A stretch of DNA of 63,715 bases, the filler included, from Octopus bimaculoides (taxonomy: Eukaryota), in assembly GCF_001194135.2 (NCBI RefSeq). It is 7 parts of 7 records of this genome, joined end to end, with 100 filler letters (N's around TTAATTAATTAA, not from the genome) between each part and the next. Parts side by side here need not be neighbours in the genome. Positions count along the whole stretch, not along the records: positions 21,677 to 32,879 come from NC_068990.1; 6 more parts are not named here. One strand, given 5' to 3'. Under the pieces are notes generated by a model. That model did not search any database and was not told the origin of the DNA. It worked only from the letters and a program-made list of their open reading frames with translations. A program made the translations under genes and the position numbers. Below, piece after piece: positions 21,715 to 31,759 of the stretch; position 1 is the stretch's first letter, and every line of letters starts with the position of its first letter.

Positions 21715-22570
21715 CATTTATATACTATTTTGGTATATTCTACTGACGAGGACAAAGTAATTGTTATATTGCTAAGCCAGAAATCGTTCGATCTAGAATT
21801 AACTTCCAAATAAAATTTGCTAAATCTTTTTTATTTATCACCTCGCTTTGAGCCTGTGTTAATGGAGTGTTTCATGTGGCTTTAAAGTCGTTTGACGTCT
21901 ACTTCTAGCATGTTGGTGCTGTTTCTCACTACCCTTAATTATAATTATATCTATTTAATTATATATCTATATCTGTATATATTTACTCACATAAGTACAT
22001 ATATACATTTACGTGCATACATATTTATATACATATACCTATGTGTGTGTGTGTATGTCAGGTCGCTCTTGTTACCAGATCGACCTGATGTACACACACA
22101 CACATAGATATATGTATATAAATAAGTGTGCACGTAAATGTATATATATGCATATATGAGTAAATATATATGACCCAGTACAACCTGTTGCATGGTCGAG
22201 TCATCGGCGACTAAACCGGCAACCCCACCAAGCTTACGTGATGAGGAGGGTGACTGTTGGACACTCTGCGGGATAAAAAACAAGGCCCGTCAAAGGGCGG
22301 AAGAACTCAGAAGAGTCAATGGCTATCCAATAAAGTATGTAAAGTTGTGTGGGTGTATTTTATGTTGTGTTTATATGTGTGTGTATTCTTGTGTGTATTT
22401 CTATTATGAATTTTTATATTTTTATTTGTATTATATATATATATTTATATTTTTTATCTTGTTCAGTGTATATGATGGTGTATATTCATTATTACTAACT
22501 TTGTGGCAGTTAATGTGTGTCTGTGTGTGTCAATGTCAGAGCATGTAAAAACCCTATGACGAGCGGATAG

Positions 22571-23397
22571 TAGCTCTGGATCTTTTTTAAAACGGGGGCC
22601 ACAGTATTTTCTTAACGAAACACTTTGAAACTTGGAACACTGGTAGAATGTGTCATATAAAACATCTTTTTCTCTTAGTCTTCTTAAAAAAAAAAAAGAA
22701 ATCCCTAAGTTATTCCATGTTAAAGTTGTCGTATTTCTGTAATTTCAACCAATCACTGACGTCCATTCAGCCGATATACATTAAGTGCCGACTACATAAA
22801 CAAACGATTCTGAAACAATTCTATCGGTGATAAAATTATTATTTCCTTGTCAAAAAATGGCTGAAGCATATTGGCAGTAGCTAATAAACCTTTCTATTAT
22901 AGGCTAACCCTTACCCTAACCCTAACCCTAACCCTAGGGTTAGGGTTAGGGTAAAACAGCAANNNNNNNNNNNNNNNNNNNNNNNNNNNNNNNNNNNNNN
23001 NNNNNNNNNNNNNNNNNNNNNNNNNNNNNNNNNNNNNNNNNNNNNNAAAACGAAGCAAAAAAAAAGAAAATGAAAAAAGCAAATTTAAAATGAAAAAAAA
23101 GCAAATTTAACGAAGGAAAACGAACACTGTCAGAAGTTATGGAGATTAAATACGCTTTACACCGCTTAATCAGCCAAAGGAGTAAATGTAAACAACTGAA
23201 TACTTGTCAGTGATTGGTTGAAATTATCGAAATAAGACAATTTTTTACATGAAATAAATTCGAATACAAAAATATTTTTCTGTTCTATAACACAAAATAG
23301 ATAAGTATACGAAGTTTGAAAGTCTTTCGGTACCAAAAACACTACGTAAAACATTAATGAAAACTGTGGCCCCCGTTTTAAAATAGATCCGTAGCTC
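22571..23397. mobile_element. Foldback-type non-autonomous DNA element with long imperfect TIRs
   Basis: GGATCT(T/A)TTTTAAAACGGGGGCCACAGT and AATTTCAACCAATCACTGAC are present in inverted orientation at both ends. No TSD was found. Confidence 0.75.
22904..22953. repeat. Inverted junction of telomeric repeats, (CCCTAA)n then (TTAGGG)n
   Basis: CTAACCC TTACCC TAACCC TAACCC TAACCC TAGGGT TAGGGT TAGGGT, centred on CCCTAGGG at 22932-22939. Confidence 0.9.
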
Positions 23398-23399
23398 TT

Positions 23400-26300
23400 T
23401 AGTCTTGGATGACAAGCTACCTAGGAGAAAGATACGCCGAAATTAAACCTGCAGTCTCGATGAGCATCCATTGATGAGAATCTATTCCTCTTTGTGGGTT
23501 ATGCTTTTGGTACTTAGAGAATGAGATTGGGTGGGTGCAAGCCCTCTCCTCACTTTAAAAAGTTTCTGGCACGGGTATTGCTTGAGAAAATTTTGCTGAA
23601 GTTACACGAGCTCAATGAATGGGGCTGGTCGTAACCCTAAAAAAGGCTTAAATACAATTATGAGATCCATAAACTATTGGTAAGGAGATGCAAAAGTATG
23701 CAATGGACATTGTAGCGTTATCAGAGACGAGATTTCTTGGGCAAGGTGATTTTACTTAGAAATCCAGTGGCTACATATTTTATTGGAGTGGGAAAGAAGA
23801 AAAAGAAAATTGCAAAAAAGAAAGTGGTACTGCTTTTGCTCTGAAAACCTCCTTGGTTGATAAGTTAGAGGAACTGCCATACAGTGCAAACGATAGAATG
23901 ATATTGCTGAGGCTACCTTTAAAAAAAGGTCGGTATGTACCCAGTATGAATGCAAGTGATAATGAAAAGCTCTCCTTTTATGATGTATTGAACGAAAATA
24001 TCCGCAAAATTTCAATCGAGGATAAGATTATCATATTGGGTGACTTTAATGCTAGAGTTGGTAAAGATCATGAGACATGGGGTGTGATTAGAAAACAGAG
24101 TGGGAAATTGTAACAGCAATGGCTTACTTTTGTTACAGATGTGTTCTGAGCTGAATCTATTAATTATGAGCACTGCTTTTCAGCAAAAAGATAAGTACAA
24201 AACTACATGGATGCACCCTGGTTCAAAACGATGGCACCTAATAGACTACAAGATAACTAGAAAGCGAGATAAGAGAGATTTCTGTATAGTGCGAGTCATG
24301 CGGAAACAGAATGTTGGACAGATCATCGCTTGGTTCGTAGGAAGATCAAGTTTGTAGTGAAGCCATAAAGTAGACAAAGTGGCTCTGGCATCCCTAAATG
24401 TTTGAATGTGAATCTCCTTAAGGATAAAGCAGTCAGAGTAGAATTTCAGCAGAAAATCGAAAATTTGGATTGGACAGATGAGTGGATAGACTTCAGAGGA
24501 CAACTATACAATTTAAATAAAGGAGTTTTAGGAGTAAAGAAGAAACATCAAGATTGGTTTGATGAAAGTGATGGAAATATTCCACATTTGTTGGAAGGAA
24601 CACGAAAGGCATTGCATTCATTACTAGCAACTGAATCTGACCAAAATAGAACTTTTTTCAAAGAGATAAAAGCAGATGTGCAAAGAAAGATTCGAAGCAT
24701 GCAAGACACTTGGTGGCAGAAGAAAGCAGAAGAGATAGAGGCTGCTTCCAATGTTATGAACACTAAGTTATTATATACTCTCCTTCATGAGGTGTATAGC
24801 CCATCCTACTTTGGCTCATGTGAAGAATAGGAATGGTGTTTTATTGAAGGAGGCCAAAGACATCTTAAAACGATGGGAGGAACATTTCAATGAAATTTTG
24901 AATCGACTATCAGTTGTTGATGAAAAGAGTTTTGATATGATTCCACAGAATGCGCCCATTGAGTGATTAGATGACACCCCATCAGTGGAGGAAACAATAA
25001 AAGCAGTCTGAATGTAGACCTGTTTAACTTTGCGGGGTACTACTTGCTAGAAATGCTGACAGCAGTAATACAGAAGATATGTAAAAATGAAGTTATGCCA
25101 AAAACTGGAAGGATGCGGTCATGGAAGTTGTGTTCAAGGGTAACGTACAAAAAGATGAATGCAATAATTTTCGTGGTAATTACCTGATTGACACAGCCGG
25201 CAAAGTTCTATCACGAATAATGCTGGACCGGCTGCAGATATATGTGGGTGGCTAATGAGATTCTTCCTGAACCATAGAGTGGATTCAGAAATGGTAGGGG
25301 TACTGTTGACATAATCTTTTCTGCACGGCAGTTACAGGAAAAGTGTGTGGAACAGCAAATAGGACTTTATCAGGTATTCATTGATCTTACTAAGGCTTTT
25401 GAATCTGTCAATCGAACTGCCTTGTGGGAGATCTTGAAGAGACTTACATGCCCGGTAAAGTTTTTCACTATTCTGAAGCAGTTTCATGATGGCATGGAAG
25501 TAAGTATCAACATTGGCGAAAAGCTCTCGGAGCCTATCACAGTCATGAATGGGGTAAAACAAGGTGACATACTAGCACCCACTCTCTTCACCCTCTATTT
25601 TACTATAGTTTTTTTCTAATTAGCTTTCAAAGGCTCTTATGAAGGTATATATATCAGATATCGTACAACAGGAAAAATCTTTAACATCCACTCTTATTAG
25701 TGACCTCCTTTATGCAGATGACTGTGATACTGTCACTCATACTGAGGAGGAGATGCAAAATCTTATGAATGCAATTTCAATGGCTTATGAGGCACTTGGC
25801 TTAACCGTAAATCTAATCAAAATTGTCGTCATGTTTCAGCCAGCACCAGGAATACCATACATAGAACCTGGTATTTTCGTGTATGGAAGAAAACTTGCTG
25901 TGGCTTCTAAATTTGTTAACTTTGGAAGCACACTAAACATGTCAGCGAATCTTGATGATGAAGTGTCACTACGCATTCAGAAAACCAGTTTTGCTTTTGG
26001 CAAACTGGAAGACCGCCTGTGGTCTAGACATGGTATTTCCACTGCAACAAAGATTTAAGTATACAATACATGTATCTTAACCTCTTTATTATATGCTTGC
26101 GAAACTTGGACTGTATATCGTAAGCACTTAAAACTTATGGAACGTTTTCATCAACAATGTCTCAGAAGGATTTTGAGGATCAGCTGGAAAATGTTTGTGA
26201 GTGACGATGAGGTACTTGAAAGAGGGAAATGCTTCACTATTGAAACTTTGCTATTGCAGTATAGATTGAGATAGAGTGGATACTTAGTCAGAACGACAGA

Positions 26301-26933
26301 CAACAGAATGCCCAAACAACTTTTTTACAGAGAATTGGTGACAGGTAAGTGTCCATCCCACAAACCAAAGATGAGGTACAAAGAATGTCTGAAGTTGGGA
26401 TTGAATGAGATAAATGTTCCAATTGACAACTGGGAAGATTTAGCACATTACCGAGAAAAATGGAAAAAATGTTGTGTATGAAGGCAAAAATGAATTTGAA
26501 AGGAAGAGAATGGAGCGTGCAAAGATCAAAAGAAAGATGAGAAAAAATGACAGGAATGATGCTATAACAAGCATTAATGAACGTGATGATCTTACATGTG
26601 ATGAATGTGGAAAGATTTGTCTTAGTAAAGCTGGGCTAAAGAGCCACATGAAATCACACATTCCACAACCGCACATTGATTACAGATCGACAGATGATTT
26701 CGAATGCATACTGTCATAAAGTATGCAGATCGAAAAGTGGCTTGAAAAGGCATAGTAAAGTTCATGGAGCTGTAAACTATACAATCACCAAGTTTTCTTG
26801 CACTAATTGTCAAAAAGCATGCAAGTCTTTGGCAGGCTTCAAGAGCCATATTCGTACAGCTCATCGATGATATTCAAGGGTATAAAGAAATCAGGCAATG
26901 GCTCTACTCGAAATCGATTTGGCAACCATCATG
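23400..26933 (+). mobile_element. Near-full-length decayed RTE (BovB-like) LINE: APE + RT + three C2H2 zinc fingers
   Basis: APE motifs ILGDFNARVG and NSNGLLLL...TWMHP...WHLIDY. RT motifs FIDLTKAF, GVKQGDILAPTLF and LLYADD. C-terminal fingers at 26590-26870. Many stops and frameshifts. Confidence 0.95.
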
Positions 26934-27269: not shown

Positions 27270-27659
27270 GCCTATGTTGATCTATTTGTCAATGTAGTCT
27301 ATAAATTTACAGTAACTACTCCAACTAATAATTTCATTTATGTTGGTTGCACAATCAACCTTAAACAACGATTATATAATCATTTTTCTTCATTTAGACT
27401 TAAACATAAAGCCAATAGCACATCATTATCTAATAAAATTTGAGAATTGAAGGAAAATGGTATCGATTTTAATCTTAAATGGGAAATCGTCAGGCGAGCA
27501 CAACCTTATAGAAATAGTAGATATGGCTGTGGATTGTGCTCTATGGAAATTTACGAAATTTTTAAACTTAAAGATAATCCTAATCTAATTAACAATAGAT
27601 CTGATCTTAGGGTTCTATGTGTGCATTGTTACTCCCGCACCTTTAAATATTTTAAAAAG
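27270..27659 (+). mobile_element. Penelope-like element, GIY-YIG endonuclease C-terminus (Neptune-like), cut by a gap
   Basis: VVYKFTV...IYVGCTINLKQRLYNHFSSF...LSNKI*ELKEN...KWEIV...PY...CGLCSME...LINNRSDLRVLCVH. Confidence 0.85.
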
Positions 27660-28655
27660 NNNNNNNNNNNNNNNNNNNNNNNNNNNNNNNNNNNNNNNNN
27701 NNNNNNNNNNNNNNNNNNNNNNNNNNNNNNNNNNNNNNNNNNNNNNNNNNNNNNNNNNNNNNNNNNNNNNNNNNNNNNNNNNNNNNNNNNNNNNNNNNNN
27801 NNNNNNNNNNNNNNNNNNNNNNNNNNNNNNNNNNNNNNNNNNNNNNNNNNNNNNNNNNNNNNNNNNNNNNNNNNNNNNNNNNNNNNNNNNNNNNNNNNNN
27901 NNNNNNNNNNNNNNNNNNNNNNNNNNNNNNNNNNNNNNNNNNNNNNNNNNNNNNNNNNNNNNNNNNNNNNNNNNNNNNNNNNNNNNNNNNNNNNNNNNNN
28001 NNNNNNNNNNNNNNNNCTTGATTTACCCCTAACCTGCTGTCCATCACTACTTAATCTATCTTCCTCTAAATTTGAAATTACTACTATCCCTCCAATTAGA
28101 TTTAAATTCTTGTTTGATTCACTAGTCTGTTAAACAGCAGCATAGTCGAGATGGTATGCTTTCTTCTCTTACTCTTGTTTTTGTAAACATCTTCAAAATG
28201 ACTTTCTAAAATGAAATTCCATTATGCAGCTGAGGAGTACATTTTCATTGTAAATTCTATGTGGTGTTCTCACTACATGAATAAATGGAGCTTGTACGAA
28301 ACGTACTACTGCTATAACCTATTGAATTTTTGTTGCTTATCTTCAAATATATATATATGATATTTAAAATATAATGTTAACACGGTATGCAAAATAGTAT
28401 TCCCGGTTTCCTGTAGCTACTGTAATTGTTGAGTATATACACACATTGGTTGCTTGTTTGTCTAGGCTTGATCAAATTGATGTAGACGCCTTTGATGAGA
28501 ATGCAATAAGATACGAAAATCGATTAAGCTTGTTCAGTCTACGGAGAAACAGCTAAATTAGCCCTGTTTATAAAGGTACTATATAGGTTACACACACACA
28601 CACACACGCAAACACACACACACACACATATAATTCACCGTCACTAAAAGTGCCC

Positions 28656-28920
28656 GAGGATGCAATGAGCACCGGCATTACTAGAATTCAGCTTCACCAG
28701 TGTGCACCGGAATTGCGAGAATTCAGTTTCACCACCAGCAATGGAGTGAGCATTACTGACGAGTATTAATTTCTGTACGAAATTTGCATGCTAATCTAAT
28801 GCAACTCGTTTGCTGTGGGGAATTGTCTCTCCTGTCGATTCAACTAGAACATTGTGCTCTATGTGGCTAAAGAGTCTATGAGTCTTATTTCTGGTAATGC
28901 CGGTGCTCATCTTCATCCTC
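28656..28920 (+). mobile_element. ~265-nt fold-back unit enclosing a hammerhead ribozyme (retrozyme-like or PLE terminal repeat)
   Basis: 28656-28686 (GAGGATGCAATGAGCACCGGCATTACTAGAA) pairs with 28889-28920. The internal extended stem I spans ~28731-28820. Confidence 0.65.
28750..28802 (+). ncRNA. Canonical type I hammerhead ribozyme, predicted cleavage after C28796 (AUC)
   Basis: GCATTA-CTGACGA-GTA(ttaatttctg)TAC-GAAA-TT(tgcatgct)AA-TC-TAATGC. All conserved core nucleotides are present and stem I is a perfect 6 bp. Confidence 0.85.
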
Positions 28921-29371
28921 AAAGACCATAAAGGCTACATCTACAGCAATCGTTTCATAAGATTTATCATTCTGTATGTGTGTGTATGTGCGCGCGCGTG
29001 TATGTGTTTGCACGTATGTATATGTGAGTGGATACGTGCACATGTGCGTGCGTGTAATTGGTTATTCAAACTTAGAGTTTCTTTTGTAATAAACAGCAGA
29101 ATGGTTACATAATACTTGTATGTCTTATCTACGTTTTCATTACATACATGCATGCATGCATACATACAGACAGACATTCATGCATAGTACACACATACAT
29201 ATATACATACATGCATATATACATATATGCATGTAAGCATGCATTCATTCATACATACATACATGCATGCATGCGTACCTACCTACATACATACATACAT
29301 ACATAATGCATGTAAGCACACATGCATACAGACAAGCATACATATATGACATACATACATACATACATACA

Positions 29372-30838: not shown

Positions 30839-31066
30839 GTCTTCGATTTCAGATCCCTCACAGGTCTGGTCGTTGACCACACATACGTCTTCGATTTCAG
30901 ATCCCTCACAGGTCTGGTCGCTGACCACACATATACAGAACACAGCTACAGCCAGTTCCANNNNNNNNNNGTCTGGTCGTTGACCACACATACGTCTTCG
31001 ATTTCAGATCCCTCACAGGTCTGGTCGCTGACCACACATATACAGAACACAGCTACAGCCAGTTCC
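30839..31066. repeat. 48-bp tandem unit (2 copies) plus an exact duplication of 30864-30960 across a 10-N gap
   Basis: Directly visible. The duplicate across the gap is probably an unmerged contig overlap. Confidence 0.8.
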
Positions 31067-31759
31067 AGCGTCGACGTCTTCACCACCAATGTACTGTCTA
31101 CCACAATGTCGTCGCCAGCAACACCAACACCAACATCAACAAGCTCAGTTTTATCTTCACTGTATGAGTGGAGTTTCCACTCACGAACAACAGTCAGAAC
31201 TAACCAGCGAGAATATTCCGTACTAGGTAACACAGGTCGCAGCATTCGACGCTCAACACACATAGTGTGATACTACAGCTCTGCTCCTTGGCCACAACTT
31301 CCTGCGTATGAACATTCTAAATCTTGTGTAACTCTTATACGAACTGGTTTTCTCTATCTCAGTGTTTTAAGACTGTTTTACAGACACTCTTACTATGTTC
31401 TGTGTTTCCTCTCATTCATACGCACACTTGTACACTCACATATTGTATACACACTATTGCTTATATGACTGTTCGTCACTTCACATTGTTGTATACCTTC
31501 TCTTGTACACAAAGGCCTGATTTATCTACTGTCTTAATTTTATATGTCGCATGCACGCACACACAGACAAACAGTTTCACTTTGTTAATAAATTTATTCT
31601 CATTATATATCTAACGGTTGAGTTTGTCCTAAGTTCTTTTACGGGCACAATGGCTCGTATCTCTCTTACGACGAGCCTTCCAACTTATATATCTTGTTTT
31701 GTGTTCGACCGTGCGACATGGTAAAAAGGAGCCTTTTACCGTCTACGTCGCCATCTCCT

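What the first reader, a model, noticed from the sequence alone, without database searches (positions are those of the whole stretch)
28656..28920. Intact type I hammerhead ribozyme nested in a ~265-nt self-complementary unit
Seen: a complete core (CUGACGA, G10.1-C11.1, GAAA, AUC) and a 6-bp stem I that extends through GAGT/ACTC, CAGCAA/TTGCTG and CCAC/GTGG. The stem III loop contains the palindrome GCAUGC, a possible dimerisation site. A further ~31-bp helix closes the unit (28656-28686 with 28889-28920). It lies on the same strand as, and ~1.1 kb after, a PLE GIY-YIG remnant. Established: PLE terminal repeats and animal retrozymes carry type I hammerheads, and retrozymes yield small circular RNAs. 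Inference: this is a retrozyme-like or PLE-terminal self-cleaving element, possibly still active. If it is co-transcribed with a + strand host intron, it could cut the pre-mRNA.
Basis: partly seen in the sequence, partly recalled or inferred. Interest (0 to 1): 0.85.

Follow-up and report, generated by a model that had tools for sequence, protein, structure and literature searches.

The report
Lone hammerhead ribozyme hairpin near transposon
A 265-base hairpin carries a complete hammerhead self-cutting RNA motif at its tip and looks like a single stranded copy of a known kind of animal ribozyme-bearing mobile element, sitting just past the decayed end of a Penelope-like retrotransposon that has its own, different hammerhead.

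Summary
At 28750-28802 (+) there is a full type I hammerhead: stem I 6 bp, CUGACGA, helix II 4 bp with G10.1-C11.1, GAAA, helix III 3 bp with a GCAUGC loop, and C17 at 28796. It sits at the tip of a 265-nt hairpin (z = -9.3). A motif this strict arose once in 22,117 shuffles of the piece.

The upstream GIY-YIG is a Penelope-like endonuclease remnant, specifically of the Hydra clade. This second motif has homologues with compensatory changes in Octopus sinensis and in a sequencing-run contig. The element ends near 28343 at a (TA)n tract, so the reported unit lies about 310 nt beyond it and is a separate insertion.

The unit's 6/4-bp helix layout, size, GC content and rod fold fit an animal non-LTR retrozyme. 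However, it is a single copy with no tandem partner, no target-site duplication and no relative found anywhere I could search.

The active fold is 9.5 kcal/mol less stable than a competing fold, so monomer activity is probably weak.

Verdict: a real motif, a new member of a known kind, and probably a relic. No cephalopod genome could be searched at the DNA level.

The parts
28656..28920 (+). 265-nt self-complementary unit (long hairpin) with hammerhead 1 at its tip
   Evidence: Fold is -106.5 kcal/mol, z -9.26 on + and z -7.0 on -. GC is 43.8% against 37.4% for the piece.
28750..28802 (+). Hammerhead 1 (type I). Stem I 28750-55/28797-802; core CUGACGA 28756-62; helix II 28763-78; GAA 28779-81; helix III 28782-95 with GCAUGC loop; C17 at 28796; predicted cut after 28796.
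   Evidence: Read from the sequence. The strict descriptor hits only here and hit once in 22,117 shuffles.
28656..28686 (+). Outer closing helix, 5' arm. It pairs with 28889-28920 and is nearly perfect, like a terminal inverted repeat.
28889..28920 (+). Outer closing helix, 3' arm
28663..28732 (+). 35-nt tandem duplication inside the left arm (28663-97 and 28698-732, 83% identical)
28226..28312 (+). Stem I GCAG/CUGC (plus bulge, plus UUAU/AUAA); CUGAGGA 28230-36; helix II GUACA 28237-41 / UGUAC 28293-97 with a 51-nt insert; GAAA 28298-301; short helix III A28301-U28307; A17 at 28308.
   Evidence: Descriptor hit; a motif of this class is expected 1.5e-3 times per piece. It has homologues in L001 (two copies) and L040, with compensatory changes.
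28147..28343 (+). 3'-terminal module of the Penelope-like element that carries hammerhead 2. Homology to the Octopus sinensis 257-bp repeat ends here.
   Evidence: Boundaries are approximate.
28345..28358 (.). (TA)7 tract at the 3' end of the Penelope-like element, the typical Hydra-clade target
   Evidence: Craig et al. 2021, PMC8557442. The same junction is seen in the L001 minus copy.
27288..27659 (+). Hydra-clade GIY-YIG endonuclease remnant. It is 5'-truncated (the CxCx5C linker is missing), has one TGG>TGA stop at 27441-43, and runs into an N gap at 27660-28016.
   Evidence: Pfam GIY-YIG E 1.6e-6. 2,497 relatives. 56% identity to the O. sinensis copy. Motif comparison.
28590..28628 (.). 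(AC)n microsatellite 27 nt left of the unit
28973..29030 (.). TG-rich microsatellite 52 nt right of the unit, of opposite polarity to the left one

Best explanation
The 265-nt unit is a solitary genomic copy of a retrozyme-like element. These are non-autonomous retroelements that depend on Penelope-like elements. Their RNA is a rod with a canonical type I hammerhead at one tip. The unit lies in microsatellite-rich DNA about 310 nt past the 3' end of a decayed, 5'-truncated Hydra-clade Penelope-like element, which has its own hammerhead.

Shown:
- The motif, the rod, the neighbouring element and that element's separate hammerhead.

Inferred:
- In such elements a multimeric + strand transcript is cut by the hammerhead. 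When helix III is short and palindromic, two copies pair through loop 3 to do this.
- The monomers are then ligated into circles by a host ligase and copied back into DNA by a Penelope-like reverse transcriptase/endonuclease.
- Here only one copy is present, so at most one cut (after C28796) is possible and no circle can form.
- The catalytic fold is strongly out-competed by a rod-extending alternative fold.
- The copy is therefore most likely an inactive or weakly active relic.
For: - Complete core and three helices. The motif is very unlikely by chance in this piece.
- Stem I runs straight into a rod of about 100 bp (z -9.3). This is what a type I hammerhead circle must look like.
- Helix I of 6 bp, helix II of 4 bp and a short helix III with a palindromic loop match the 'canonical' animal layout of PMC4209133. 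PMC7229834 places that layout in non-LTR retrozymes of 170-400 nt with GC below 45-50% and highly self-paired RNAs. The unit is 265 nt and 43.8% GC.
- Monomeric copies of retrozyme families are reported to be common and dispersed (preprint 10.64898/2026.07.22.740005). The same preprint reports that such families derive from the terminal repeats of Penelope-like elements.
- A Hydra-clade endonuclease remnant lies on the same strand.
- Relatives of that endonuclease are followed by same-strand hammerheads with palindromic helix III in L041, L042 and L043/L044, in tandem and inverted arrays within (TA)n.
- Hammerhead 1 shows no sequence similarity to hammerhead 2 or to any of those. It lies beyond the (TA)n end of the element.
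Against: - No second copy or tandem partner exists in the 11.2-kb piece.
- No target-site duplication of 5 nt or more.
- No relative in any fetched locus.
- Nothing from a six-frame translation search of 5.8 billion proteins.
- Only chance 22-nt matches in prokaryotic genomes.
- G.U pairs are balanced between strands (7 against 6), so the rod could equally be a DNA-level palindrome.
- The near-perfect outer 31 bp with a diverged interior looks like a terminal-inverted-repeat element.
- No Rfam hammerhead hit.
- The active fold is 9.5 kcal/mol above the minimum free energy.
Confidence: 0.6

Rival explanations
1. The unit is still part of the same Penelope-like insertion, as a further terminal repeat, a 'tail', or a partial tandem or inverted copy. 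Hammerhead 1 would then be a second element-borne ribozyme.
For: - It is on the same strand, about 1.1 kb after the endonuclease.
- Penelope-like insertions are often complex tandem/inverted arrays in microsatellites (seen in L041).
- A 16-nt direct repeat (14/16) at 28131 and 29090 brackets both hammerheads.
Against: - Homology to the O. sinensis and L040 copies stops near 28343 at (TA)n.
- The 310 nt between and the unit itself match nothing in those loci.
- The two hammerheads share only the core.
- Terminal repeats of one element should be near-identical.
- About 0.7 such 16-mer pairs are expected by chance (my estimate).
- The 488 nt between the two cut sites does not fold better than shuffles (z +1.6).
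Confidence: 0.15
2. The unit is a DNA-level palindrome or foldback/miniature inverted-repeat transposon. The hammerhead-like centre has no RNA role: either an old ribozyme captured in the loop, or a snap-back copy made during reverse transcription.
For: - The 31-bp ends are near-perfect while the interior has diverged.
- Both strands fold well.
- There is no strand bias in G.U pairs.
- The flanking microsatellites have opposite polarity, as in an inverted duplication.
- The piece holds other inverted-repeat elements.
Against: - No target-site duplication.
- By my estimate, a complete core with helices II and III arising by chance in a 41-nt loop has odds of about 1e-9 per hairpin.
- The + strand is 11.6 kcal/mol more stable than the - strand.
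Confidence: 0.12
3. The hammerhead has been taken over by the host and acts in cis on a host transcript. The comparison (from my own knowledge) is the conserved intronic hammerheads of amniotes.
For: Only that the core is intact in otherwise decayed surroundings.
Against: - No host gene or conservation could be shown.
- Retrozymes are reported depleted from introns.
- The active fold is disfavoured.
Confidence: 0.04

Closest known systems
Animal non-LTR retrozymes (Cervera & de la Pena 2020, PMC7229834; Li et al. 2026 preprint)
   Same: - Canonical type I hammerhead (helix I 6 bp, helix II 4 bp, short helix III with palindromic loop).
- Unit size within 170-400 nt and GC below 45%.
- Rod-like, highly self-paired RNA with the ribozyme at one end.
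- Occurs alongside Penelope-like elements.
- Dispersed monomers are known.
   Different: - Single copy here, with no tandem array.
- No family members found and expression unknown.
- Helix II is AU-rich and marginal, and a competing fold hides the core.
Hammerheads in the terminal repeats of Penelope-like elements, including the Hydra clade (Cervera & de la Pena 2014, PMC4209133; Craig et al. 2021, PMC8557442)
   Same: - Type I, with a palindromic helix III.
- Same strand as, and downstream of, a GIY-YIG endonuclease.
- Microsatellite setting.
   Different: - Penelope-type motifs seen here (L041, L042, L043) have helix I of 4-5 bp and helix II of 6-8 bp, and lie 0-270 nt after the endonuclease.
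- Hammerhead 1 has the 6/4 layout, lies beyond the element's (TA)n end, and is unrelated in sequence.
- Hammerhead 2 (28226-28312), not hammerhead 1, fills this role.
Newt satellite 2 / Schistosoma Sm-alpha type hammerheads (own knowledge; covered by Rfam Hammerhead_1)
   Same: Type I, short helix III, dimer-dependent cleavage, carried on short repeats.
   Different: No score against Rfam hammerhead models at E<=10, apart from a weak RAGATH-1-hammerhead match. No satellite array.

Membership tests
Hammerhead ribozyme, type I | Conserved core C3 U4 G5 A6 N7 G8 A9 / G12 A13 A14 / A15.1-U16.1 / H17 | tested here: met
   CUGACGA at 28756-62, GAA at 28779-81, A28782-U28795, C28796
Hammerhead ribozyme, type I | Three helices around the core, helices II and III capped, stem I open, G10.1-C11.1 | tested here: met
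   Helices of 6/4/3 bp, G28763-C28778. One hit in 22,117 shuffles.
Hammerhead ribozyme, type I | Match to a curated covariance model (Rfam) | tested here: not met
   No hammerhead family reached gathering score; the best was RF03152 at 15.9 bits against 56.3. A positive control, the L041 Penelope hammerhead, is also missed, so the test is insensitive for this class.
Hammerhead ribozyme, type I | Site-specific self-cleavage | not testable with these tools
   Energy model only: the active-compatible fold is 9.5 kcal/mol above the minimum free energy.
Hammerhead ribozyme, type I | Covariation in the stems among relatives | tested here: inconclusive
   No relative of hammerhead 1 was found. No cephalopod genome can be searched at the DNA level with these tools.
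Animal non-LTR retrozyme | Head-to-tail tandem repeats of 170-400 bp, each with a hammerhead | tested here: not met
   Single copy in 11.2 kb. Monomer derivatives are, however, described for these families.
Animal non-LTR retrozyme | Unit size, low GC, highly self-paired predicted RNA | tested here: met
   265 nt, 43.8% GC, z -9.26
Animal non-LTR retrozyme | Multi-copy family; linear and circular RNAs in vivo | not testable with these tools
   The indirect protein-space search was negative.
Penelope-like element terminal (pLTR) hammerhead | Lies inside the terminal repeat / 3' end of the element | tested here: not met
   Homology to other copies ends near 28343 at (TA)7; the unit starts at 28656. 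This feature is met by hammerhead 2 at 28226-28312 instead.
Hydra clade of Penelope-like elements (for the GIY-YIG remnant) | No CC between GIY and YIG; CxxC and CxH either side of the E and N residues; CxCx5C linker; RWK and DKT motifs in the reverse transcriptase; C-terminal endonuclease; (TA)n targets; hammerhead present | tested here: met
   - The window shows VVYKF..YVG without Cys, plus CGLC and CVH.
- The linker is seen in relatives P0003 and P0004; RWK and DKT are seen in P0109.
- (TA)7 at the 3' end.
- Hammerheads after the endonuclease in L041, L042 and L043.
- The linker and reverse transcriptase are missing from the window copy itself because it is truncated.

The most novel reading that the evidence does not exclude
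The unit founds an undescribed cephalopod family of hairpin-shaped hammerhead elements that spread as single units rather than tandem arrays. Their genomic ends would lie at the far tip of the RNA rod, because reverse transcription is primed in the terminal loop of a circular or multimeric template. They would be mobilised by Hydra-clade Penelope-like elements. This would be a retrozyme with the genomic look of a miniature inverted-repeat element.
Probability: 0.12. Interest if true: 0.6.

Novelty: new member of a known kind. Interest (0 to 1): 0.35.

Why it matters
If the unit belongs to a living family, cephalopods would join corals, mussels and salamanders as hosts of ribozyme-made circular RNAs. 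The side-by-side pair here would also be useful: a Penelope-type hammerhead on the element's own 3' end, and a canonical hammerhead on a separate short unit. It would be a compact example for the current proposal that animal retrozymes are non-autonomous offshoots of Penelope-like elements. As it stands, the locus is one probably inert copy and changes nothing in that picture.

Tried and rejected
- **Rfam scans.** The piece and 301-nt sub-windows gave no hammerhead. I rejected this as evidence against the motif once the L041 control also failed.
- **Repeat search in the piece.** No second copy.
- **Protein route to relatives.** The word-indexed search found nothing for the endonuclease and only P0003 for the octopus copy. 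The exhaustive HMMER search worked.
- **Six-frame translation of the unit against 5.8 billion proteins**, used as a proxy DNA search: nothing.
- **Pattern scans.** The 22-nt arm motif in prokaryotic genomes gave three chance matches. The 20-base core pattern in metagenomes gave 30 bacterial coding matches without helices.
- **Exact look-up of ten window reading frames** to name the source genome: none on record.
- **Target-site duplication search:** none.
- **tRNA-derived SINE idea:** no tRNA found.
- **Two-hammerhead 488-nt circle idea:** the interval does not fold better than shuffles.
- **The O. sinensis 257-bp repeat as a rod-like analogue of the unit:** it is not self-paired (z 0.21).
- **Selenocysteine reading of the in-frame TGA:** rejected, because the codon aligns to tryptophan.
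- **Paper supplements with hammerhead sequences:** not held, or no match.

Full report
**Observation.** The sequence at 28750-28802 (+) spells a complete type I hammerhead:
- Stem I is GCAUUA/UAAUGC.
- The core is CUGACGA.
- Helix II has four pairs closed by G10.1-C11.1, with an 8-nt loop.
- GAAA follows.
- Helix III has three pairs (A-U, U-A, U-A), and its loop holds GCAUGC.
- C17 is at 28796.

Stem I continues through small internal loops into a rod that closes with a near-perfect 31-bp helix (28656-86 with 28889-920). The 265 nt fold at -106.5 kcal/mol against -67 for shuffles (z -9.26). The complementary strand also folds well (z -7.0).

**Chance.** A descriptor I wrote (I>=6, II>=4, III>=3, G10.1-C11.1) hits only this site in the piece. 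It hit once in 22,117 dinucleotide shuffles. That rate still allows about ten chance motifs in a genome of a few gigabases. The decisive point is the roughly 100-bp rod in exact register with stem I. As a control, thirty metagenome matches to the bare core pattern were all GC-rich bacterial sequence without helices.

Rfam finds no hammerhead here. It also misses an undoubted Penelope-type hammerhead (L041). I therefore treat this negative as uninformative.

**Surroundings.** The + strand upstream holds three things in order:
- A decayed LINE at 23853-26870, with an endonuclease/reverse transcriptase and C2H2 fingers.
- A GIY-YIG reading frame at 27288-27659 (Pfam E 1.6e-6).
- A run of 357 N.

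The exhaustive protein search found 2,497 relatives of the GIY-YIG frame. The nearest known location is Octopus sinensis chromosome CM016863.1 (L001). Others lie on contigs of sequencing runs SRR118693xx.

The frame and its relatives show the diagnostic features that Craig et al. 2021 give for the Hydra clade of Penelope-like elements:
- No cysteine pair between GIY and YIG.
- CxxC and CxH flanking the catalytic E and N.
- A CxCx5C linker.
- RWK and DKT motifs in long relatives.

The window copy lacks the linker and the reverse transcriptase, so it is 5'-truncated. Its in-frame TGA aligns to tryptophan.

**A second hammerhead.** The relaxed descriptor found another intact core on the same strand at 28226-28312:
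- Stem I is GCAG/CUGC.
- The core is CUGAGGA.
- Helix II is GUACA/UGUAC around a 51-nt insert.
- GAAA follows, then a short helix III, with A17 at 28308.

A motif of this class with G10.1-C11.1 is expected 1.5e-3 times per piece.

This region is homologous to a 257-bp repeat present twice in L001, and to the end of L040. In each of the three loci with an endonuclease frame (the window, the L001 plus copy and L040) it lies downstream of a Hydra-type endonuclease on the same strand. The local alignments to the L001 plus copy and to L040 beat all 200 shuffles; the L001 minus copy was equalled by one shuffle (MAFFT alignment).

| Position | Window | L001 | L040 |
|---|---|---|---|
| Stem I | GCAG/CUGC | UUUGG/CUGAA | UGUAA/UUGC |
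| 10.1-11.1 | G-C | A-U | – |
| 10.5-11.5 | A-U | G-C | – |

The core is invariant across these copies, so the differences in the stems are compensatory changes.

Homology stops about ten bases after TTGTTGCTT. In the window that is near 28343, and (TA)7 follows. The L001 minus copy likewise ends at (TA)n. This is the target preference reported for the Hydra clade.

Other relatives of the endonuclease carry same-strand hammerheads with palindromic helix III:
- L041: 31 nt after the stop, repeated at 290-nt spacing, with an inverted copy, all within (TA)n.
- L042: four copies in 20 kb.
- L043/L044: overlapping the stop.

Hammerhead 2 is therefore the element's own terminal ribozyme.

**What the reported unit is.** It starts about 310 nt beyond that 3' end. 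It shares no sequence with hammerhead 2 or with any fetched locus.

Its layout differs from the Penelope-type motifs seen here, which have helix I of 4-5 bp and helix II of 6-8 bp. The unit has the 'canonical' animal 6/4 layout with a short helix III and palindromic loop (PMC4209133). Cervera and de la Pena 2020 place that layout in non-LTR retrozymes. Size (265 nt), GC (43.8%) and the rod fold all fit.

A type I hammerhead in a circular RNA must have the rest of the molecule growing out of stem I. A ribozyme at the tip of a rod is therefore the expected shape. A 2026 preprint reports that retrozyme families derive from Penelope terminal repeats and that dispersed monomer copies are frequent.

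My best reading is a solitary retrozyme-like copy next to, but not part of, the Hydra-clade remnant.

**Weak points.**
- There is no tandem partner, no target-site duplication and no relative. The attempts included a six-frame translation search used as a stand-in for a DNA search.
- G.U pairs are balanced between the strands (7 against 6).
- The outer 31 bp are far better conserved than the interior.
- The flanking microsatellites have opposite polarity.

The last three features would also fit a DNA-level palindrome. None of the collections available allows a nucleotide search of a cephalopod genome. The key test, copies with covariation, therefore remains undone.

**Activity.**
- Helix II alone is worth -0.3 kcal/mol.
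- In the minimum-energy fold the core is taken up by AAUUUC/GAAAUU and AGUAU/AUGCU.
- The best fold compatible with catalysis is 9.5 kcal/mol higher. The same figure is 4.4 for the young L041 hammerhead, whose helix II appears in its minimum-energy fold.
- Loop 3 can pair with a second copy through GCAUGC, as in dimer-dependent animal hammerheads. No second copy is present in cis.

I expect weak or no cleavage of a monomeric transcript. With one site, no circle can form. The idea that hammerheads 2 and 1 together release a 488-nt RNA is not supported by its fold (z +1.6).

**Verdict.** The motif is real and not a chance match. The Penelope context is confirmed and refined to the Hydra clade. 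The retrozyme-like reading is the best available, at about 0.6. This is a new member of a known kind, of modest interest.

Noticed in passing
window 28226-28312 (+): A second intact hammerhead core with a 51-nt insert in helix II. It has homologues with compensatory changes in Octopus sinensis (L001 6803-6868 and an inverted copy) and in L040. It is the 3'-terminal ribozyme of the Hydra-clade element.
   Followed up: yes
window 23853-26870 (+): A decayed LINE (endonuclease/exonuclease/phosphatase domain, RVT_1, two C2H2 fingers) broken by frameshifts. It lies directly upstream of the GIY-YIG remnant and is unrelated to it.
   Followed up: partly
window 27441-27443: The in-frame TGA in the endonuclease remnant aligns to the W of SKIWELK in relatives. 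It is a plain nonsense change, not a selenocysteine codon of the kind described for Naiad elements.
   Followed up: yes
window 22722-22770 and 23196-23244: 49-nt inverted repeat arms (84% complementary) enclose (CTAACC)5.5 telomere-like repeats at 22904-22936 and an N run. This may be a miniature inverted-repeat element.
   Followed up: no
window 21976-22170: A 97-nt-arm palindrome (89% complementary) in AT/TG-rich simple sequence. It accounts for several of the sub-threshold microRNA-model hits from Rfam.
   Followed up: no
window 30839-31068: A minisatellite of 48/107-nt period. Two 97-nt copies are 100% identical across a 10-N gap, which may be an assembly artefact.
   Followed up: no
window 28131-28146 and 29090-29105: A 16-nt direct repeat (14/16 identical) brackets both hammerheads. 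About 0.7 such pairs are expected by chance in this stretch (my estimate), so it is not taken as a target-site duplication.
   Followed up: partly
window 28590-28628 and 28973-29030: The unit is flanked by (AC)n on the left and TG-rich repeats on the right, of opposite polarity. Both contain GCAAACACA or its complement. Unexplained; it could hint at an inverted duplication.
   Followed up: partly
L041 3660-4963: A 5'-truncated Hydra-clade element in (TA)n. It has a 100% identical 290-nt tandem of its 3' end, an inverted copy at 98%, and a hammerhead in each. Rfam 15 does not detect these hammerheads.
   Followed up: yes
L001 5271-5683 (Octopus sinensis CM016863.1): An intact Hydra-type endonuclease frame. 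The gene model that contains it (P0003) is named 'myelin gene regulatory factor-like A' by NCBI, which is likely a transposon-derived misannotation.
   Followed up: partly
L039 4151-4174 and 7905-7928: A full-length relative (628 aa) is flanked by direct repeats 3,754 nt apart. Each repeat holds CUGAAGA...GAAA, but I could not draw a hammerhead around it.
   Followed up: partly
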